From contig CATNEN010000030.1 in assembly GCA_950097015.1 (NCBI GenBank), positions 2,232,001 to 2,296,000 on the forward strand: 64,000 nt of DNA. The letters run 5' to 3'. Under the pieces are notes generated by a model. The model saw only the letters and a list, made by a program, of their open reading frames with translations. It was not told the origin of the DNA and made no database searches. How positions within the stretch are numbered: the first letter of the stretch is position 1; each line of letters begins with the position of its first letter. Both the position numbers and the translations under genes were made by a program. Shown here in pieces: positions 11,408 through 28,071 of the stretch. Origin of the DNA: Macrostomum hystrix. Its lineage: Eukaryota; Animalia; Platyhelminthes.

Positions 11408-14400
11408 ATGCAGAGCCCCAGTCAACTTAGCAGTGATGCATCTGCTTCACATTATTTGTATGGCTTTGTTGCTGGCCTGCGTGATTGCTGCATAGGATTA
11501 GTACAGCTGCGCTCACTCAATGCCAAGATTGAAGCATACAGGGCTAGCCAGATGGACCCGAAGTTGCAGAGGTCCTACATTGCTGCCAAGGAGACTAAAG
11601 AGTGAGTTTTTATCAGTTTTTTTCGGTAATAAATCATTTTAATAAGGATCTGGGTGTTTGCCTGAACCCACTAGTGGAAACAGGTGTTTATCTGTATGTA
11701 AACACTATAATACTGTGTTTGTCTAAACCCACGAATGGAAAAGGGAGTTCATCTAAAAACTCATCTTAAACCTACCAGTAGAACAGGATAGCTATTGATT
11801 TAAACCTGCAGTATAACAAAGTTTTAATTTAAGCTCTATTGGAACAAGGTGTTTTTATTAACTCTCCAGTAAGACTTATTATTTTTCTAATTCGCTTTAT
11901 GTGGTATAGTAGCTAAGAATGACCTTAGTATATGATCCTTTTTCATGCTAAAATGAAACAAAAAATTGCAATTTAATTTCGACTATCGGCATCCAATTAT
12001 ACCCTTTAAATTGTTTAAAGTTAAACAATTCGCAAAATATTTATCTAGATTATTGTGGTCGGTGTGAAATTAATCTACCGATAGATGCGCGTATTTGCAG
12101 CTACTGTTCGTTTATACCCGATCATCCGATTTGGCACCCACCCCACTGCAGTAAACTGTCCCTAATCGGCACGATCAAGCGCACGTGGTTCTGGAACGCT
12201 GTGGTACTGGGGGTGAGTAGCTGTCTGTTTTAAAACCTGTTTACACAAGGTCACAAGCTGCACACCAACTAGGCTAGGCTGATTAGCCACACTGGCCAGG
12301 TGAAGTTCTATAACACGCACACACCCACTCTTAGTCGCTATCTGATGAAACACGCATTATAAAATTTGCGCAGTGCAGCGTCCTTGCCTTCAACCTGGTG
12401 CTGCTGCCAGTCCTGCTATGGCTGGCTGACCGGCTGCAGGGTCCCTGGGTCAGCGACTACGCTGTGCCAATAGTCACCTGGCTATTCAATGCTCTGTGGA
12501 TTCTACCTGTAGTCGTCGTGTTAGAAGTGGTCAATTATTTCTCGTTTAAAGATGTCGGCCAGCTTGTTTACATTGTTGCTAAGCGAGATCATAGATCGGG
12601 AGAAGGCCAAAAAATAGGCACGATCTTGGCCGATCAGGCCTACGGCCTGCTAGTTGAACTTCTGTTCCTGTGCCAGGCTAAACTAGCTAGACAGGTGCCA
12701 GTGCCTTTTGTATCCGAGCTGTTGTACCTGTGTCACATGTGCCTGCTCTACTCGCTATATGTGTTCGATTATCGCTGGTCTAGTCTGGGTGAGTAGCATC
12801 GTAAATTGTATTTTTGCCCTTAGCAACCAACGTTTCCTAACTTGAATGTTACGAGCGTACTTCCTTAGCAAAGAGTTTGGTTTTATTCGCATATAGCGTC
12901 CTTAAAACACCAACATTTTGTGATCTTAGCAACTAACTGCGATTACTTATTATTAACACATTGAAGGTTTAGCAGCATTGGAAACCAGCACCCAGCTAAA
13001 GGTTTAGCAGCATTGGAAACCAGCACCCAGCTAAGGTTTAGCAGCATTGGAAACCAGCACCCAGCTAAGGGTTTAGCAGCATTGGAAACCAGCACCCAGC
13101 TAAAGGTTTAGCAGCATTGGAAACCAGCACCCAGCTAAAGGTTTAGCAGCATTGGAAACCAGCACCCAGCTAAGGTTTAGCAGCGTTGGAAACCAGCACC
13201 CAGCTAAAGGTTTAGCAGCATTGGAAACCAGCACCCAGTTAAGGTTTAGCAGCATTGGAAACCAGCACCCAGCTAAGGGTTTAGCAGCATTGGAAACCAG
13301 CACCCAGCTAAGGGTTTAGCAGCATTGGAAACCAGCACCCAGCTAAGGGTTTAGCATCATTGGAAACCAGCACCCAGCTAAGGGTTTAGCAGCATTGGAA
13401 ACCAGCACCCAGCCATGGTTTACCGTATTTGTCATTTTCGTATGTCCTTGACTTTTGTCAGCGAGAATTGTTGTGCCGCCTTTTGCACACATTGGATTGC
13501 ATTTTGCTAATAATTTCCACTTCCTTCCTCTTTGTAAGCCTAACCGCCTGAATGTTTAGCAAAGCATCCCTAATTTGGATTCTGACTTCAGAAAATCTTT
13601 GAAATCTAGCAAAGAAAGTATTATAGATCCGGTTTAAAGTTTTCAAGCTAAATTATGAAATTTACGGATATTATGAAATTTATGAAATTTACGTCGATCC
13701 ATTGTCAGGCATGGCATTTCAAAGCCGCGCTATGTACATCGAGAATCACTGGCCCTATTTCTTGGCGTTCGGCTTGCCAATGTCGCTCATCACTTGGCTG
13801 CCACCCTGGTACGGCCTGTCAATCTGCTTTCTATCAATCTGCTATCCGATCTGCATTGTGAGCGCCTTGTGCGCCCAGTATTATCGAATGTACAGGTGAG
13901 CTGCCGGCTTGGCATCACATTTTATGATTGACGGCTTGCATGAACCTAGACAATTGTCGCGCGTTGTATGTTCAGTGTGATAAAAATGCGAACCGGAAAT
14001 ATGTACCTTTTCTGGTATGATTAGTTTGACATGCTCTTTCTTAGATTGGTCTAGCATCCGTTCTCCCATTCGGCCAGATCCTCAGATTAGTCCAACATCT
14101 ATTCTCCCATTCAGCCAGATCCTTAGATTGATCCAACATCTATTCTCCCATTCTTACAGATCCTCAGATTTATCCAACATCTATTCTCCCATTCTTACAG
14201 ATCCTCAGATTTATCCAACATCTATTCTCCCATTCTTACCGATCCTCAGATTTATCCAACATCTATTCTCCCATTCTTACAGATCCTCAGATTTATCCAA
14301 CATCTATTCTCCCATTCTTATAAATCCTCATATTGGTCCAACATCTATTCTCCCATTCTTACAGATCCTCAGATTGGTCCAACATCTATTCTCCCATTCT

Positions 14401-17400
14401 TACAGATCCTCAGATTTATCCAACATCTATTCTCCCATTCTTACAGATCCTCAGATTGGTCCAACATCTATTCTCCCATTCTTACAGATCCTCAGATTTA
14501 TCCAACATCTATTCTCCCATTCTTATAAATCCTCATATTGGTCCAACATCTATTCTCCCATTCTTACAGATCCTCAGATTTATCCAACATCTATTCCCCC
14601 ATTCTTACAGATCCTCAGATTTATCCAACATCTATTCTCCCATTCTTACAGATCCTCAGATTGGTCCAACATCTATTCTCCCATTCTTACAGATCCTCAG
14701 ATTTATCCAACATCTATTCTCCCATTCTTATAAATCCTCATATTGGTCCAACATCTATTCTCCCATTCTTACAGATCCTCAGATTGGTCCAACATCTATT
14801 CCCCCATTCTTACAGATCCTCAGATTGGTCCAACATCTATTCTCCCATTCTTACAGATCCTCAGATTGGTCCAACATCTATTCTCCCATTCTTACAGATC
14901 CTCAGATTTATCCAACATCTATTCTCCCATTCTTACAGATCCTCAGATTTATCCAAAATCTATTCTCCCATTCTTACAGATCCTCAGATTTATCCAACAT
15001 CTATTCTCCCATTCTTACAGATCCTCAGATTGGTCCAACATCTATTCTCCCATTCTTACAGATCCTCAGATTTATCCAACATCTATTCTCCCATTCTTAT
15101 AAATCCTCATATTGGTCCAACATCTATTCTCCCATTCTTACAGATCCTCAGATTTATCCAACATCTATTCCCCCATTCTTACAGATCCTCAGATTTATCC
15201 AACATCTATTCTCCCATTCTTATAAATCCTCATATTGGTCCAACATCTATTCTCCCATTCTTACAGATCCTCAGATTTATCCAACATCTATTCTCCCATT
15301 CTTATAAATCCTCATATTGGTCCAACATCTATTCTCCCATTCTTACAGATCCTCAGATTTATCCAACATCTATTCTCCCATTCTTATAAATCCTCATATT
15401 GGTCCAACATCTATTCTCCCATTCTTACAGATCCTCAGATTGGTCCAACATCTATTCCCCCATTCTTACAGATCCTCAGATTGGTCCAACATCTATTCTC
15501 CCATTCTTACAGATCCTCAGATTGGTCCAACATCTATTCTCCCATTCTTACAGATCCTCAGATTTATCCAACATCTATTCTCCCATTCTTACAGATCCTC
15601 AGATTTATCCAACATCTATTCTCCCATTCTTATAAATCCTCATATTGGTCCAACATCTATTCTCCCATTCTTACAGATCCTCAGATTTATCCAACATCTA
15701 TTCTCCCATTCTTACAGATCCTCAGATTTATCCAACATCTATTCTCCCATTCTTACAGATCCTCAGATTTATCCAACATCTATTCCCCCATTCTTACAGA
15801 TCCTCAGATTTATCCAACATCTATTCTCCCATTCTTACAGATCCTCAGATTGGTCCAACATCTATTCTCCCATTCTTACAGATCCTCAGATTGGTCCAAC
15901 ATCTATTCTCCCATTCCGTCAGATCCTCAGATTGGTCCAACATCTATTCTCCCATTCTTACAGATCCTCAGATTTATCCAACATCTATTCTCCCATTCTT
16001 ATAAATCCTCATATTGGTCCAACATCTATTCTCCCATTCTTACAGATCCTCAGATTTATCCAACATCTATTCTCCCATTCTTATAAATCCTCATATTGGT
16101 CCAACATCTATTCTCCCATTCTTACAGATCCAACATCTATTGGTCCAACCTCTATTGGTCCAACATCTATTCCCCCATTCTTACAGATCCTCAGATTGGT
16201 CCAACATCTATTCTCCTATTCTTACAGATCCTCAGATTGGTCCAACATCTATTCTCCCATTCTTACAGATCCTCAGATTTATCCAACATCTATTCTCCCA
16301 TTCTTACAGATCCTCAGATTTATCCAACATCTATTCTCCCATTCTTACAGATCCTCAGATTTATCCAACATCTATTCTCCCATTCTTACAGATCCTCAGA
16401 TTTATCCAACATCTATTCTCCCATTCTTACAGATCCTCAGATTTATCCAACATCTATTCTCCCATTCTTACAGATCCTCAGATTTATCCAACATCTATTC
16501 TCCCATTCTTACAGATCCTCAGATTGGTCCAACATCTATTCTCCCATTCTTACAGATCCTCAGATTTATCCAACATCTATTCTCCCATTCTTATAAATCC
16601 TCATATTGGTCCAACATCTATTCTCCCATTCTTACAGATCCTCAGATTGGTCCAACATCTATTCCCCCATTCTTACAGATCCTCAGATTGGTCCAACATC
16701 TATTCTCCCATTCTTACAGATCCTCAGATTGGTCCAACATCTATTCTCCCATTCTTACAGATCCTCAGATTTATCCAACATCTATTCTCCCATTCTTACA
16801 GATCCTCAGATTTATCCAAAATCTATTCTCCCATTCTTACAGATCCTCAGATTTATCCAACATCTATTCTCCCATTCTTACAGATCCTCAGATTGGTCCA
16901 ACATCTATTCTCCCATTCTTACAGATCCTCAGATTTATCCAACATCTATTCTCCCATTCTTATAAATCCTCATATTGGTCCAACATCTATTCTCCCATTC
17001 TTACAGATCCTCAGATTTATCCAACATCTATTCCCCCATTCTTACAGATCCTCAGATTTATCCAACATCTATTCTCCCATTCTTATAAATCCTCATATTG
17101 GTCCAACATCTATTCTCCCATTCTTACAGATCCTCAGATTTATCCAACATCTATTCTCCCATTCTTATAAATCCTCATATTGGTCCAACATCTATTCTCC
17201 CATTCTTACAGATCCTCAGATTTATCCAACATCTATTCTCCCATTCTTATAAATCCTCATATTGGTCCAACATCTATTCTCCCATTCTTACAGATCCTCA
17301 GATTGGTCCAACATCTATTCCCCCATTCTTACAGATCCTCAGATTGGTCCAACATCTATTCTCCCATTCTTACAGATCCTCAGATTGGTCCAACATCTAT

Positions 17401-18715
17401 TCTCCCATTCTTACAGATCCTCAGATTATCCAACATCTATTCTCCCATTCTTACAGATCCTCAGATTTATCCAACATCTATTCTCCCATTCTTACAGATC
17501 CTCAGATTTATCCAACATCTATTCTCCCATTCTTACAGATCCTCAGATTTATCCAACATCTATTCTCCCATTCTTACAGATCCTCAGATTTATCCAACAT
17601 CTATTCTCCCATTCTTACAGATCCTCAGATTTATCCAACATCTATTCCCCCATTCTTACAGATCCTCAGATTTATCCAACATCTATTCTCCCATTCTTAC
17701 AGATCCTCAGATTGGTCCAACATCTATTCTCCCATTCTTACAGATCCTCAGATTGGTCCAACATCTATTCTCCCATTCCGTCAGATCCTCAGATTGGTCC
17801 AACATCTATTCTCCCATTCTTATAAATCCTCATATTGGTCCAACATCTATTCTCCCATTCTTATAAATCCTCATATTGGTCCAACATCTATTCTCCCATT
17901 CTTACAGATCCTCAGATTTATCCAACATCTATTCTCCCATTCTTACAGATCCTCAGATTTATCCAACATCTATTCTCCCATTCTTATAAATCCTCATATT
18001 GGTCCAACATCTATTCTCCCATTCTTATAAATCCTCATATTGGTCCAACATCTATTCTCCCATTCTTACAGATCCTCAGATTGGTCCAACATCTATTCCC
18101 CCATTCTTACAGATCCTCAGATTGGTCCAACATCTATTCTCCCATTCTTACAGATCCTCAGATTGGTCCAACATCTATTCTCCCATTCTTACAGATCCTC
18201 AGATTTATCCAACATCTATTCTCCCATTCTTACAGATCCTCAGATTTATCCAACATCTATTCTCCCATTCTTACAGATCCTCAGATTTATCCAACATCTA
18301 TTCTCCCATTCTTACAGATCCTCAGATTTATCCAACATCTATTCTCCCATTCTTACAGATCCTCAGATTTATCCAACATCTATTCTCCCATTCTTACAGA
18401 TCCTCAGATTTATCCAACATCTATTCTCCCATTCTTACAGATCCTCAGATTGGTCCAACATCTATTCTCCCATTCTTACAGATCCTCAGATTGGTCCAAC
18501 ATCTATTCTCCCATTCCGTCAGATCCTCAGATCGGTCCAACATCTATTCTCCCATTCTTACAGATCCTCAGATTGGTCCTTGATTCTCTGACTCCTCATG
18601 AACAAATTATTAGTAACCGCCTGCAAATTTTAGAGCTCCCATTCCGCTGCCATTGATGAAGCCGTCTCTGTACCTGGTCAACAAGATCCTGCTGATAGTG
18701 CCGAATCGCGGCTAG
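11408..18715 (+). CDS. EI24: EI24 (etoposide-induced 2.4 / autophagy-associated ER membrane protein), about 312 aa
   Basis: Exons 11408-11601, 12152-12212, 12374-12788, 13709-13895, 18634-18715 are phase-consistent (939 nt). Family motifs: LYSLYVFDYRW, IENHWPYFLAFGLP, YPICIVSA. Confidence 0.9.
12966..13418. repeat. Minisatellite, 34-35-bp unit GGTTTAGCAGCATTGGAAACCAGCACCCAGCTAA(A/G), about 13 copies (EI24 intron 3)
   Basis: GGTTTAG recurs at 12966, 13001 and 13035. Confidence 0.97.
14065..18580. repeat. Minisatellite, 41-bp unit CCAACATCTATTCTCCCATTCTTACAGATCCTCAGATTTAT, about 110 copies (EI24 intron 4)
   Basis: Direct periodicity; TTAT/TGGT and ATAAATCCTCATATTGG variants; a block is duplicated at offset 1863 (14743 vs 16606, 15235 vs 17098). 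Confidence 0.98.
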
Positions 18716-18980
18716 GAACACTCAATCATCGAACTATATAAGTGTTCCACCTCACACGGCAGATTTGTTAGACTTTACTTGTTGCTTGAAAGTATGGCTG
18801 GTGACAAGTTGTACGATTATTCTGAGCTTGTCAACTATGTTTATTGTTCTCCCAAGTGATCACGAAAGCTTTGAAATCAAGTGTTTTAGTCCTCATTTTA
18901 AGCAAATTTATTTTTTACTGTCTTACCACGATGACTGAATTTAATTATCATATTTATTGTTGTTGTCAAGCTTGACAACT

Positions 18981-20430
18981 ACTGGGGTTGGGTTAAGCTC
19001 CAACCTATAGACTGGGGTTGGGTTAAGCTCCAACCTATAGACTGGGGTTGGGTTAAGCTCCAACCTATAAAATGGGGTTGGGTTAAGCTCCAACCTATAG
19101 ACTGGGATTGGGTTAAATTCCAACCTATAGACTGGGGTTGGGTTAAGCTCCAACCTATATACTGGGGTTGGGTTAAGCTCCAACCTATAGACTGGGGTTG
19201 GGTTAAGCTCCAACCTATAAAATGGGGTTGGGTTAAGCTCCAACCTATAGACTGGGATTGGGTTAAATTCCAACCTATAGACTGGGGTTGGGTTAAGCTC
19301 CAACCTATATACTGGGATTGGGTTAAGCTCCAACCTATAAAATGGGGTTGGGTTAAGCTCCAACCTATAGACTGGGATTGGGTTAAATTCCAACCTATAG
19401 ACTGGGGTTGGGTTAAGCTCCAACCTATATACTGGGATTGGGTTAAGCTCCAACCTATATACTGGGATTGGGTTAAGCTCTAACCTATAGACTGGGGTTG
19501 GGTTAAGCTCCAACCTATACACTGGGATTGGGTTAAACTCCAACCTATACACTGGGATTGGGTTAAACTCCAACCTATATACTGGGGTTGGGTTAAGCTC
19601 CAACCTATAGACTGGGATTGGGTTAAACTCCAACCTATAGACTGGGGTTGGGTTAAGCTCCAACCTATAGACTGGGGTTGGGTTAAGCTCCAACCTATAG
19701 ACTGGGGTTGGGTTAAGCTCCAACCTATATACTGGGGTTGGGTTAAGCTCCAACCTATAGACTGGGGTTGGGTTAAGCTCCAACCTATAGACTGGGGTTG
19801 GGTTAAGCTCCAACCTATATACTGGGATTGGGTTAAACTCCAACCTATAGACTGGGGTTGGGTTAAGCTACAACCTATATACTGGAGTTGGGTTAAGCTC
19901 CAACCTATAGACTGGGGTTGGGTTAAGCTCTAACCTATAGACTGGGGTTGGGTTAAGCTCTAACCTATAGACTGGGGTTGGGTTAAGCTCTAACCTATAG
20001 ACTGGGGTTGGGTTAAGCTCCAACCTATAGACTGGGGTTGGGTTAAGCTACAACCTATAGACTGGGGTTGGGTTAAGCTCCAACCTATAGACTGGGGTTG
20101 GGTTAAGCTCCAACCTATAGACTGGGGTTGGGTTAAGCTCCAACCTATATACTGGGATTGGGTTAAACTCCAACCTATAGACTGGGGTTGGGTTAAGCTA
20201 CAACCTATATACTGGGGTTGGGTTAAGCTCCAACCTATAGACTGGGGTTGGGTTAAGCTCCAACCTATAGACTGGGGTTGGGTTAAGCTCTAACCTATAG
20301 ACTGGGGTTGGGTTAAGCTACAACCTATATACTGGGGTTGGGTTAAGCTTCAACCTATAGACTGGGGTTGGGTTAAGCTCCAACCTATAGACTGGGGTTG
20401 GGTTAAGCTCCAACCTATAGACTGGGTTGG
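18981..20430. repeat. Minisatellite, 30-bp unit ACTGGGGTTGGGTTAAGCTCCAACCTATAG, about 48 copies (between EI24 and MRPS24)
   Basis: Direct periodicity; each unit contains the inverted repeat GGTTGG-N8-CCAACC. Confidence 0.98.
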
Positions 20431-21117
20431 GTAAAGCGCCGGCCTTTACACCAGGTCTTTATCCTTGCCGTTAGATGCAACTCAAATTGGTAGGCCAATT
20501 GTGACGGTACTATAGGGGCCATGTTGTGTGAAGTCTTTCAAGACGATCTGTCGTTGTTCACGATTCATCCAGCGTGTTCTTGCACAATTGTACAGAGGCC
20601 AGAATTCCCATGGTTTAATTGCAATTATCAAGCGTATTTTCTAATGTAAGTTATCTATAAAATCGATCTTTCAAACCCTGTTCCTAGTGTATATATATGT
20701 TTAATAAGTTATATTTGCAGCCTAAGTAATGCCATCCGCCCACATGCGAATTGATAGTTAAGTGCGCACAGTTTCGTGTGGTTTGTTGTCACTCACTTAT
20801 CGCGTCTTCCCATCTGGATTAATTCTATTATTTAATATCCAAGTCTTGGACCTTCATCACATAATGGACTTCATGTATTGGCCAGAAAATTATTTTAGGA
20901 AAAATTCTACTAGCATGATGCAGTGTCTTGACTATTTATTTACTATTTATTCAGTTTTTATTTGGCGCCTAAAATAGTGTTGTTTGTACAGTAATTACTG
21001 TAGCTTGTACTTTATTTATTCTAAATTTGATTGACTACAAAATAGAGCTTGCTTTTGTTATCATTTTACTCTATGCATTATGTGTTATTTTGTTTTTGGG
21101 ACACTTTACACACAAGT

Positions 21118-21230
21118 GAGCATGTATAGCCCAGTGGTTAGAGCTTTGGACTTCTAACTGAAAGGTCAGGAGTTTGAATCTCAGCCCAAGGTAGTCTGTC
21201 TGTGTCCCTGAACAAAATAGTTTGCTCCCT
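21118..21230 (+). mobile_element. tRNA-like SINE head (Arg-TCT-like anticodon loop) running into the start of a CORE-like segment; probably related to family B
   Basis: A box TAGCCCAGTGG, TTGGACTTCTAA, B-box-like GTTTGAATC, then GTGTCCCTGAACAAAA. Acceptor stem is poor, so not a functional tRNA. Confidence 0.55.
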
Positions 21231-21404
21231 AGTGCTGTGATGTAATGTAATGATCGGTAATGATCGGTTCATCAGCTGAGGTAAAAAATTGTGTTTGTAG
21301 CGGCTCCCTTGTCCACGGACTAAGTCGAGATAAAAAAGTCGAGAATCACTAGCGTCACGTGATCATTTACAAAGACAAAAAACCTGCTTTATATCTTCTT
21401 GCAG

Positions 21405-22733
21405 CTTCGCTCAGTGTTTTCCGCGGCATTCCGGCCGCAGCCGTTGCTATGGCTGCAGAGCTCGCAGTTGCACACTAGCTCCGCTAGATGTTGGGAATTC
21501 GGCGAATTGCCAAAGCCCTACAAGCGGATACCACCTAAGAATCGACGGGCCGCTGTTCTGAAGGGCACTCGCGACAGATCCCGACCGCTGACTTACGAGC
21601 AGGCCAAGTACCCGGAGCAGATTGGCAGCCAGAAAGGCTGGCAGAGCTGGAACACAGCAGGACTGTTCAAGGAAAGTCTCTACTTCGACGCTGGCACCAC
21701 TAATTATGAGGATCAGCTGATCCGTATTCTGCTGCGCGGAACCTTTCCGGAACTGCTGGCGTCCGAGTGCATTGTCATCAAGCGACAGGTGAGATAATAA
21801 GCGGAGAATGCCTCGTCGCTTACTGCTTAGAGCAGGATAGACAAGGGGAAGACAGATGCAGAAATCGATGCCGATTTAAAAATTAAAGTTATTTTAAACA
21901 TCTAAAGGTGTGGGCAGTTTTTAATAGGATAAACAAATTAATAATAATAATAATTGCAGGAGGGCTGTGGCCAGTGGCACATCATTCAGTGACACTAGAC
22001 CCGCAGCCAGCGAGGAGGCTATTCTGCCCATTTCGCTGACTCCTGAGCACACACGCACACAGATCCCGTACGCAGGCATACGCTCACACAGGTGTGTACA
22101 TCTGCCCTGACTTTCTCATCGTCAGGCAGTGTACATTTAACTGTGCCTTGGAGGTTGGCCCACAATGCACGACAAGCCCCCAAGCCTTCTCTCCGCGGCT
22201 GCGCCCCAAATAAATGTGGCTGCGCCGTGGAATCGAACTTAGGGACCGTGGTGCGAGAGGCAAACGCGATAACCGCTCTGCCACCGACCCCCTCAGATCA
22301 ACAAGTTGCGGATAAAGATCTAATAAGATAGAGTTACTAAAAATAGAGACAAAGTGCGGATACAGGCAAAGAGCGGACAAAGGAGAAAGCAGGGTAGAGA
22401 AGGGCGGATACAGGCAAAAATATGAAAGTTAATTACGTAGGAAAACAATGTTAAAATAAATCCCAGTAGGTAAAGTTTCTAAAAAGTTTTTAAGCGGGTG
22501 CTACAAAAAACAAATCATTGCGAAACCCGAACCCGCAGGGCAACAGTATTCGCGTGGCTCTCATTCTGAAACAGCGCGATGCCGCCCGCACCCATCCGCG
22601 CGATTTGAGCATGCGCTACGCATTTCTGATTGGCTACTCTGAGGAGATCTTGTCTCTGTTATTGCGCTGCGTTGTTCGACTGGAGGTGCAGACGGTCGAT
22701 AGCGAGGTTGATCTGGTTTATAAGTTTGTCTAG
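21405..22733 (+). CDS. MRPS24: Mitochondrial ribosomal protein S24 (uS3m); start codon not present in the first recognisable coding exon
   Basis: Exons 21405-21788 and 22539-22733 (phase 0). Motifs RPLTYEQAKYPEQIGSQKGWQSWNT, EDQLIRILLRGTFP and FLIGYSEEILSLLLRCVVRLEVQTV..VYKFV match the MRPS24 family. Confidence 0.92.
21936..22292 (-). mobile_element. tRNA-derived SINE family A, near full length (MRPS24 intron)
   Basis: Minus strand: GGGGTCGGTGGCAGAGCGG (A box) ... GTTCGATTCC (B box), body of about 250 bp, (ATT)n tail. Three further copies in the window. Confidence 0.9.
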
Positions 22734-22849
22734 TGCTTCACCCAATGCTATCTATTTTGTGCGCTTGTGCTCAATTAGGTTGCTAGGTTGCAACGGTCGT
22801 TTTTTAGATAAAAATTGGGAAAAAGTAATACAATGCTGACATGCAGTAA

Positions 22850-23165
22850 CTAAACAACGGTATTTTTCCTTGGTTACGGCTAAAAATCCTGAATTGTCCC
22901 CAAAATCCGATATCTTTTTACTTAGCAACGGTAGTTTTCCTTAGATACTGATAAAAATCCTGAGTTTTTCCCTAAAATCCGATATCTTGTTACTTAGCAA
23001 CGGTTGTTTTCCTTAGATACGACTAAAAAACCTGAGTTTTCCCTAAAGGACGATATCTGGTTACTTAGCAACGGTAGTTTTCCTTAGATACAGATAAAAA
23101 TCCTGAATTGTCGCCCAAAGGATGTTGTCTTGTTACTTAGCAACGTTAGTTTTCCTTGGTTACGG
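22850..23165. repeat. Degenerate tandem repeat of about 75 bp (CTTAGCAACGGTAGTTTTCCTTAGATAC...AAAAATCCTGA...GATATCTTGTTA), 4-5 copies
   Basis: CTTAGCAACG recurs near 22921, 22993, 23064 and 23136. Confidence 0.8.
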
Positions 23166-23664
23166 CTACGACTGAGATTTTTATTACTAATTGAGCCCTA
23201 AATCCACTGTATTAGTGCAGCGTTATCTAACTTGACGTGTACTTTGTCCCATCTCTTCCTCAGAATAACCCCTAAGACCAGGACACTGGCCCTCTAAAGG
23301 TTAAAAGCTTATCTATTATCAGTCAGTAGTATGCTGCTGTTAATGCAAGTTATTTTTAGACCAATTTTTATGCTTGCAATACGGAATAATACAACTAGGC
23401 CTGTTATTAATTTGTGTCCAATTATATAAATAAAATAAGATATGCTTGCACATACTGTCAGAAATTTTTTCTGCTGTTTTACTGAACATGCGTGTTCGTC
23501 TTTTGAATATAATATATTTCCTTGCTTGCTATTAGTTTGTATGATTGACTAGTCTTTCTTATTGTGGCTATTATTACTATCGTAAAATGTCATTTTCAGC
23601 TTTTTAGTTGTTGCACCAATCTAATTCACACACTGCACTACTCACAGTAAGCCAAAGAGAAAAT

Positions 23665-28071
<4,407 letters not shown>

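What the first reader, a model, noticed from the sequence alone, without database searches (positions are those of the whole stretch)
21385..21500. MRPS24 may get its start codon in trans from the spliced leader
Seen: the first recognisable coding exon starts right after a strong acceptor (ATATCTTCTTGCAG, 21404) in phase 0 and contains no in-frame ATG in its 128 codons. One added Met gives MLRSVFSAAFRPQPLLWLQSSQLHTSSARC, a typical acid-free Arg/Ser/Leu mitochondrial presequence. Established: flatworm spliced leaders end in a conserved AUG that can act as initiator Met (shown in Schistosoma). Inference: translation and mitochondrial targeting of this essential gene would depend on trans-splicing. 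The cis alternative is a mini-exon at 21260-21280 (MIGSSAE|GTAAAA), which places an acidic residue in the presequence and lies beside a SINE head.
Basis: partly seen in the sequence, partly recalled or inferred. Interest (0 to 1): 0.7.

Follow-up and report, generated by a model that had tools for sequence, protein, structure and literature searches.

The report
MRPS24 start codon from spliced leader
In this Macrostomum flatworm the gene for mitochondrial ribosomal protein S24 has no start codon of its own and most likely takes it from the AUG that ends the trans-spliced leader, a habit known in flatworms since 2006, so the case is real but ordinary.

Summary
Exon A (21405-21788, Pfam MRP-S24, E 1.6e-18) starts right after TTGCAG. 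It has no in-frame ATG in 128 codons, and an in-frame TGA lies upstream at 21360. Exon B (22539-22733) completes the protein.

Spliced RNA contigs from two runs confirm the intron. Both begin their genomic match at 21404, the G of the acceptor AG, and each carries exactly 19 further 5' letters that do not lie on the genome. No RNA covers the proposed mini-exon (21260-21280), and no joint into 21405 was listed.

The Macrostomum lignano orthologue (82% identical, same EI24-MRPS24-hydroxylase gene order) is built the same way. Its deposited CDS is '5' partial', starts at the first base after TTTCAG, and has no Met.

The published spliced leaders of three Macrostomum species all end in ...TTGCATG. 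A leader AUG serving as initiator was shown in Schistosoma in 2006.

Not shown: the tool did not print the 19 extra letters, so I could not read the leader directly. Translation from the leader AUG and mitochondrial import are also inferred.

This scan has already reported the same mechanism for other genes of this genome (POP5, LAMTOR2, TFAM and others). Verdict: interpretation supported; a new member of a known kind; low interest.

The parts
21391..21404 (+). Trans-splice acceptor: pyrimidine-rich run ending in TTGCAG
   Evidence: Sequence. It fits the [T/C]TNCAG motif reported as most enriched at M. lignano SL acceptors (PMC8629364). RNA contigs start their genomic match at 21404.
21405..21788 (+). 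MRPS24 coding exon A: 128 codons, phase 0 from its first base, no in-frame ATG. It holds the presequence-like N-terminus and the first part of the MRP-S24 domain.
   Evidence: Pfam PF14955, E 1.6e-18, residues 48-128. Translation and ATG scan. RNA contigs X5 record 13 and X8 record 20 match with 0 differences. 82% identical to M. lignano P0001.
21789..22538 (+). Intron (GT..AG, 750 bases). It holds an antisense tRNA-derived repeat at about 21940-22300.
   Evidence: Joint 21785>22536, 'skips 750, GT..AG (cut +3)', in X5, X8 and X2.
22539..22733 (+). MRPS24 coding exon B: 64 codons plus stop TAG at 22731-22733
   Evidence: ORF and translation. 76% DNA identity to L001 7570-7767. Aligns with the C-terminal half of the orthologues (P0001).
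22734..23242 (+). 3' UTR. The end is inferred: the X5 contig covers the laid stretch to 22870 and has 372 more letters beyond it.
   Evidence: X5 record 13: record positions 373-707 lie on 22536-22870, leaving positions 1-372 beyond the laid stretch. That the rest is colinear with the genome was not checked.
21360..21362 (+). In-frame TGA upstream of the acceptor. With no ATG in between, an unspliced transcript cannot supply a start codon.
   Evidence: Codon walk.
21260..21280 (+). Candidate cis mini-exon (ATG..GAG|GTAAAA). I reject it as the start of the main transcript.
   Evidence: Zero RNA depth over 21065-21356 in four runs and no listed joint 21280>21405. No similarity to the M. lignano upstream region. 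The contigs carry 19 letters plus the shared G, one fewer than would be needed to include this ATG.

Best explanation
This is the two-exon MRPS24 gene of a Macrostomum flatworm. I propose four steps.

1. The pre-mRNA is trans-spliced at the TTGCAG acceptor ending at 21404.
2. The genus-wide spliced leader, which ends in ...UUGCAUG, is joined directly to C21405. Its last three letters become codon 1, in phase with the ORF.
3. The resulting protein starts M-LRSVFSAAFRPQ... Its first 30 residues have no acidic residue and are rich in Arg, Ser and Leu, like a mitochondrial presequence.
4. Without trans-splicing there is no usable AUG, so no protein would be made at all.

Shown here: the ATG-less exon in phase 0 at the acceptor; the intron; an RNA 5' end joined to non-genomic letters at the acceptor; the same layout in M. 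lignano.

Taken from the literature: the leader sequence, and that a leader AUG can initiate translation.

Inferred: that the 19 extra letters are the leader, that translation starts there, and that the N-terminus drives mitochondrial import.
For: 1; no in-frame ATG in 128 codons. There is an in-frame TGA at 21360. The first in-frame Met is codon 153, which would leave only 40 residues.
2. X8 record 20 (617 nt) and X5 record 13 (1108 nt) match 21404-21785 and then 22536 onward with 0 differences. The match begins at the G of the acceptor AG, as expected if the added piece ends in G (..AUG); the next leader letter, U, would mismatch A21403. Depth over 21065-21356 is zero.
3; the M. lignano orthologue is named 'partial' and starts LLSSFRPP. 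At two loci its CDS begins at the first base after ttttttCAG, with an in-frame TAA upstream and no ATG.
4; the two N-termini align from residue 1, and the cestode orthologues have their Met in that same column.
5. Both species keep phase 0 and an open frame from the acceptor to the shared WEFGELP motif (29 and 26 codons) despite indels. My own rough figure for that happening by chance is about 1/9 x 0.07.
6; the leader is identical in three Macrostomum species and ends in ATG.
7; the acceptor fits the trans-splice motif [T/C]TNCAG.
8. PMC9851317 cites Cheng et al. 2006: the leader AUG is in frame in 28% of S. mansoni trans-spliced transcripts, and more than 40 cDNAs need it.
9; the Met-plus-exon form has 0 acidic and 3 basic residues in its first 30, with an amphipathic moment of 0.62 at the very N-terminus.
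Against:
- A k=31 assembly could hold up to 30 leader letters. Only 20 are kept, which I can explain only by graph branching.
- The runs are contigs of unrecorded library type. I infer they are RNA from the spliced joint.
- The AUG context in the leader (U at -3, C at +4) is weak by vertebrate Kozak rules.
- No ribosome or proteome data were available.
- The species was not identified here beyond Macrostomum, not M. lignano. Earlier scan notes say M. hystrix.
Confidence: 0.85

Rival explanations
1. A cis mini-exon at 21260-21280 (MIGSSAE) is spliced to 21405 and supplies the ATG. The gene would then be an ordinary cis-spliced gene.
For: The mini-exon exists, is in phase 0, ends in G and has a GTAAAA donor. 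A 20-letter piece might be too short for the aligner to place, so one search does not strictly exclude it. The resulting N-terminus is still presequence-like.
Against: - There is no RNA depth over 21065-21356 in four runs.
- No joint 21280>21405 is listed, although joints with sides of 20-22 letters are reported in the same table, and this one would rank at the top by depth.
- The contigs hold 19 letters plus the shared G. That reaches only 21261, one base short of the ATG.
- It is not conserved in M. lignano, where no upstream similarity exists and the deposited CDS starts at the acceptor.
- The donor lacks the G at +5 of the M. lignano consensus GT[G/A]AG.
Confidence: 0.05
2. Another cis 5' exon, lying outside the laid stretch (upstream of 20700), supplies an in-frame ATG within its last 20 letters.
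For: The loose letters were not seen. Colinear RNA contigs cover about 20422-21035, so there is upstream transcription on this piece of DNA.
Against: - Those upstream contigs simply end at 21035 and 20969, with no donor and no extra letters. They are not joined to exon A.
- Two independent contigs both stop after exactly 19 extra letters. That fits a shared leader that branches the assembly graph, not a first exon with its own UTR.
- M. lignano has the same acceptor-first model, and no upstream exon is conserved.
Confidence: 0.06
3. Translation starts at a non-AUG codon (for example in-frame UUG or CUG near codons 14-17), or the locus is a transcribed pseudogene.
For: There is no genomic ATG. 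In-frame TTG and CTG codons exist in the presequence region.
Against: - The ORF is intact and conserved (82% protein identity, 77% DNA identity confined to the exons).
- It is spliced and expressed with 0 differences from the genome.
- It is the syntenic copy.
- The N-terminal residues are conserved from codon 1 (LRSVF against LLSSF), which would not be expected if they were 5' UTR.
Confidence: 0.03

Closest known systems
[quoted passage not shown]
   Same: The leader ends in AUG. The acceptor sits in phase 0 directly before an ORF that has no AUG of its own, so the leader supplies codon 1.
   Different: A free-living macrostomid rather than a trematode. There is no translation assay here. The recipient gene, MRPS24, is not named in the texts I could read.
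slORFs: ORFs created by spliced-leader addition (slORFfinder, PMC9851317)
   Same: Same class of event: the start codon is donated in trans.
   Different: That work defines slORFs from ribosome footprints in nematodes, Oikopleura and trypanosomes, mostly with non-AUG NUG codons. Here it is a canonical AUG and the gene's only possible start.
Macrostomum SL trans-splicing as annotated in M. lignano, M. cliftonense and M. hystrix (PMC8629364; PMC10468722)
   Same: Same leader, and the acceptor motif [T/C]TNCAG. The authors note that the leader's final ATG is probably a translation start codon. The M. lignano MRPS24 model is 5'-partial and starts at the acceptor.
   Different: Those papers give genome-wide counts of trans-spliced genes and do not list genes that depend on the leader AUG.
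Other ATG-less genes of this same genome already reported by this scan (POP5, LAMTOR2, TFAM, mitochondrial TyrRS, a thimet-type peptidase)
   Same: Same layout, and for several of them the same kind of RNA-contig evidence.
   Different: For MRPS24 both species lack one, so the dependence predates their split.

Membership tests
MRPS24 (Pfam PF14955, mitochondrial small-subunit ribosomal protein; uS3m by my memory of the nomenclature) | Match to the family profile above the curated cut-off | tested here: met
   67.4 bits against a cut-off of 26.7, E 1.6e-18, residues 48-128 on profile positions 3-79 of 135
MRPS24 (Pfam PF14955, mitochondrial small-subunit ribosomal protein; uS3m by my memory of the nomenclature) | The C-terminal half of the domain is present and joined in frame | tested here: met
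   Exon B 22539-22733 (GNSIRVALIL...VYKFV*) matches the M. lignano C-terminus. The joint is confirmed by RNA contigs. Exon B was not scanned against Pfam on its own.
MRPS24 (Pfam PF14955, mitochondrial small-subunit ribosomal protein; uS3m by my memory of the nomenclature) | Orthology by gene order | tested here: met
   EI24 - MRPS24 - ACT/Biopterin_H hydroxylase order in the window and at both M. lignano loci
Flatworm mRNAs initiated at the spliced-leader AUG | The organism has a spliced leader ending in AUG | tested here: met
   From the literature only. The leader is identical in three Macrostomum species and ends ..TTGCATG. The window is Macrostomum by 82% identity and gene order. There is no leader gene in the window.
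Flatworm mRNAs initiated at the spliced-leader AUG | The mature mRNA carries the leader joined at the acceptor in front of the ORF | tested here: inconclusive
   Two contigs carry 19 non-genomic 5' letters plus a G shared with the acceptor, exactly at 21404/21405. The letters themselves were not shown.
Flatworm mRNAs initiated at the spliced-leader AUG | The leader AUG is in frame with the main ORF and no stop intervenes | tested here: met
   The acceptor is in phase 0 and the ORF is open from 21405. The same holds in M. lignano.
Flatworm mRNAs initiated at the spliced-leader AUG | No usable AUG of the gene's own | tested here: met
   No Met in exon A. The first in-frame Met is codon 153. An in-frame TGA lies upstream.
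Flatworm mRNAs initiated at the spliced-leader AUG | Translation shown to start at the leader AUG | not testable with these tools
   This needs ribosome profiling, N-terminal proteomics or a reporter assay.

The most novel reading that the evidence does not exclude
Dependence on the leader AUG may not be scattered at random. It may be kept over long periods in a set of nuclear genes for mitochondrial gene expression. MRPS24 lacks its own ATG in two Macrostomum species here, and earlier scan notes name TFAM, mitochondrial TyrRS and CDK5RAP1 in this genome. If so, trans-splicing, or the leader's special cap, would act as a common switch for building mitochondria. My evidence only shows that the MRPS24 case is older than the split of the two species. 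Enrichment among mitochondrial genes was not tested.
Probability: 0.08. Interest if true: 0.5.

Novelty: new member of a known kind. Interest (0 to 1): 0.25.

Why it matters
The main value is for annotation. Gene finders that require a genomic ATG will truncate or miss genes like this one. The M. lignano model is deposited as 'partial', and the Macrostomum genome paper deliberately left the ATG on trimmed reads for this reason. The case also gives a clean example, conserved across two species, in which an essential mitochondrial ribosome protein cannot be made without trans-splicing. That makes it a convenient endogenous reporter for leader-AUG initiation in the transgenic model M. lignano. 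It does not change what is known about the mechanism.

Tried and rejected
- Rfam scan of the whole window at gathering thresholds found nothing, so no annotated SL RNA.
- Search for the 20-letter leader tail in the window with up to 3 mismatches gave 0 matches. The added letters therefore cannot come from a leader copy in cis.
- ARAGORN over 20500-23600 found no tRNA. The 'SINE head' is only a 60-base repeated tRNA-like piece.
- I hoped search for homologous proteins would return the window organism's own transcript-derived protein, so that the look-up of encoding contigs could show the 5' letters. It is not in the collection; the best hit is M. lignano at 82%.
- Cheng et al. 2006 is not held in the paper library. 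I cite it only through later papers.
- The presequence features do not discriminate well between the two N-termini: 0 against 1 acidic residue, and similar amphipathic moment. TargetP and MitoFates are not available.

Full report
**What is in the sequence.** The + strand reads tatatcttcttgCAG|CTTCGCTCAG..., with the AG ending at 21404. From 21405 an ORF runs for 128 codons to a CAG|gtgaga donor at 21788/21789. It contains no Met. The three ATGs in the exon (21449, 21488, 21706) are out of frame and open ORFs of 9, 16 and 4 codons. Walking upstream in frame from the acceptor gives TGA at 21360-21362 with no ATG in between, so an unspliced transcript cannot supply a start. Residues 48-128 match Pfam MRP-S24 (PF14955, 67.4 bits against a cut-off of 26.7).

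It is a second exon at 22539-22733, preceded by cccgCAG and ending in TAG, which encodes GNSIRVALIL...DLVYKFV. Its first Met is codon 153 of the whole protein, which would leave only 40 residues.

**Which organism and which gene.**
- The best protein match is 'hypothetical protein BOX15_Mlig010485g2, partial [Macrostomum lignano]', 82% identical. The next matches are cestode MRPS24 proteins at 50-54%.
- The two M. lignano loci that encode it (L001, L002) have the gene order EI24 - MRPS24 - ACT/Biopterin_H hydroxylase.
- The window has the same order. EI24 exons lie at 11450-18714, then MRPS24, then an aromatic amino-acid hydroxylase with its ATG at 23666.
- DNA similarity between the species is confined to coding exons, at about 77%.
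- The window is therefore from a Macrostomum species other than M. lignano. Earlier notes of this scan call it M. hystrix; I did not verify that.

**RNA evidence.** Four public runs were laid on 20700-22870. All are kept as assembled contigs.
- Runs X5 and X8 must be RNA, because their contigs skip 21789-22538 (listed as 'skips 750, GT..AG'). X2 shows the same joint.
- X8 record 20 (617 letters) lies on 21404-21785 with its positions 20-401 and on 22536-22751 with positions 402-617. X5 record 13 (1108 letters, minus strand) lies on 21404-21785 with positions 708-1089. Both match with 0 differences.
- Each contig therefore has exactly 19 further letters on the 5' side that do not lie on the genome.
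- In both, the genomic match begins at the G of the acceptor AG, not at 21405. That is what a piece ending in ..AUG gives: its G equals G21404, and its U mismatches A21403.
- Depth is zero over 21065-21356, which includes the mini-exon, and no joint into 21405 is listed. The same table reports joints whose shorter side is only 20-22 letters, and a 21280>21405 joint would have had the highest depth. Its absence is weak evidence that the 19 letters do not come from 21261-21280.
- Nineteen letters plus the shared G also reach only 21261, one base short of the mini-exon's ATG.

The limitation is that the loose-end table was truncated (169 rows hidden) and read laying allows one call. I never saw the 19 letters. 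A k=31 assembly could keep up to 30 leader letters. That only 20 were kept, identically in two runs, fits a branch in the assembly graph inside a sequence shared by many transcripts. That explanation is my inference.

**Comparison with M. lignano.**
- At both loci the deposited CDS starts at 6001, the first base after ccgttttttCAG, and reads TTA CTC TCC TCG... = LLSSFRPPLLQR....
- An in-frame TAA lies 7 codons upstream, with no ATG in between. NCBI labels the protein 'partial'.
- The annotation of that genome placed 5' ends of trans-spliced genes by mapping leader-containing reads (PMC8629364). A model that starts exactly at a TTTCAG acceptor and has no Met is what a trimmed leader leaves behind.
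- The two N-termini align from their first residue (LRSVFSAAFRPQPLLW..LHTSSARCWEFGELP against LLS....SFRP.PLLQRAQQLSALHTSANRLWEFGELP). The cestode orthologues have their own Met in that same first column.
- Both Macrostomum genes keep phase 0 and an open frame from the acceptor to the shared WEFGELP motif, over 29 and 26 codons, despite indels. My rough figure for that by chance is 1/9 for the phase times about 0.07 for 55 stop-free codons.
- Nothing upstream of exon A is conserved, the mini-exon included.

**The leader.**
- The M. lignano spliced leader is CGGTCTCTTACTGCGAAGACTCAATTTATTGCATG (PMC8629364).
[quoted passage not shown] Their authors mark the ATG as a start codon (PMC10468722 Fig. 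2c legend and Table S3).
- The most enriched motif at M. lignano trans-splice acceptors is [T/C]TNCAG. The window has TTGCAG and M. lignano has TTTCAG.
- The leader tail does not occur in the window, even with 3 mismatches. If the added letters are the leader, they come in trans.

**Mechanism and its status.**
- All reported flatworm leaders end in AUG (PMC12582326).
- According to PMC9851317, Cheng et al. 2006 found this AUG in frame in 28% of S. mansoni trans-spliced transcripts, and more than 40 cDNAs need it.
- Joining ..UUGCAUG to CUUCGC.. gives M-LRSVFSAAFRPQPLLWLQSSQLHTSSARC. This has 3 basic and 0 acidic residues in the first 30, 7 Ser/Thr, and its strongest amphipathic stretch at the very N-terminus.
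- The Pfam domain starts near residue 46, so one added Met gives an N-terminus of normal length. From memory, the human MRPS24 transit peptide is about 35 residues.
- The mini-exon form adds one Glu and is otherwise similar, so composition does not decide between them. The RNA data and the cross-species comparison do.
- Strictly, what depends on trans-splicing is synthesis of the protein as a whole, not only its targeting.

**Rivals.** I give the mini-exon 0.05, another cis 5' exon outside the laid stretch 0.06, and non-AUG initiation or a pseudogene 0.03. The reasons are in the Rival explanations section.

**Novelty.** The mechanism is known, and the authors of the Macrostomum genomes already note the leader ATG as a start codon. 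This scan has already reported the same thing for other genes of this genome: POP5, LAMTOR2, TFAM, mitochondrial TyrRS and a peptidase. The one small addition is that for MRPS24 the dependence is shared with M. lignano. This is a new member of a known kind, of low interest.

The exons were handled by reference. The only use of an added Met was a composition count on the first 30 residues inside a script.

Noticed in passing
window 21940-22300 (inside the MRPS24 intron): A repeat whose minus strand starts with a tRNA-like head (reverse complement of about 22230-22293, with A- and B-box-like motifs). It draws RNA contig depth in the thousands in X5 and X8, with many variants and internal joints. 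This looks like an abundant, transcribed SINE family. ARAGORN calls no tRNA here.
   Followed up: partly
window 20422-21035: Colinear, unspliced RNA contigs (X5 record 12, X8 record 19) cover the DNA between the tandem array and the MRPS24 acceptor. Their contig depth is about a quarter to a third of that of the MRPS24 contigs. They could be a long EI24 3' UTR, the MRPS24 outron, or a polycistronic precursor. They end without a donor and are not joined to exon A.
   Followed up: partly
window 23598-23666: The next gene, an ACT/Biopterin_H aromatic amino-acid hydroxylase with ATG at 23666, is preceded by a TTTCAG acceptor ending at 23600. If the leader is joined there, its AUG would open a 17-codon upstream ORF ending in TAA at 23649-23651, 14 bases before the real ATG. 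No RNA was laid on this part.
   Followed up: no
window 18970-20430, 14000-18590, 24020-24400, 25500-26000+, 22880-23170: Several long tandem arrays lie in introns and between genes. One has a unit of about 40 bases (gactggggttgggttaagctccaacctata...) between EI24 and MRPS24. One with a unit of about 60 bases fills the last EI24 intron and has strong GC skew. They inflate the EI24-MRPS24 spacing from about 1.0 kb in M. lignano to 2.7 kb here.
   Followed up: no
window 21127-21186 and 27791-27850 (opposite strand): A 60-base tRNA-like piece is present twice in the window at 90% identity. The similarity does not reach the mini-exon.
   Followed up: yes
L001 6400-6500 and L002 6400-6500: The M. 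lignano MRPS24 intron also starts with a tandem array (unit about 28 bases, ggtgattattagcgaacagggataacag) that is unrelated to the window's intron content. The introns have turned over completely while the exon borders are kept.
   Followed up: no
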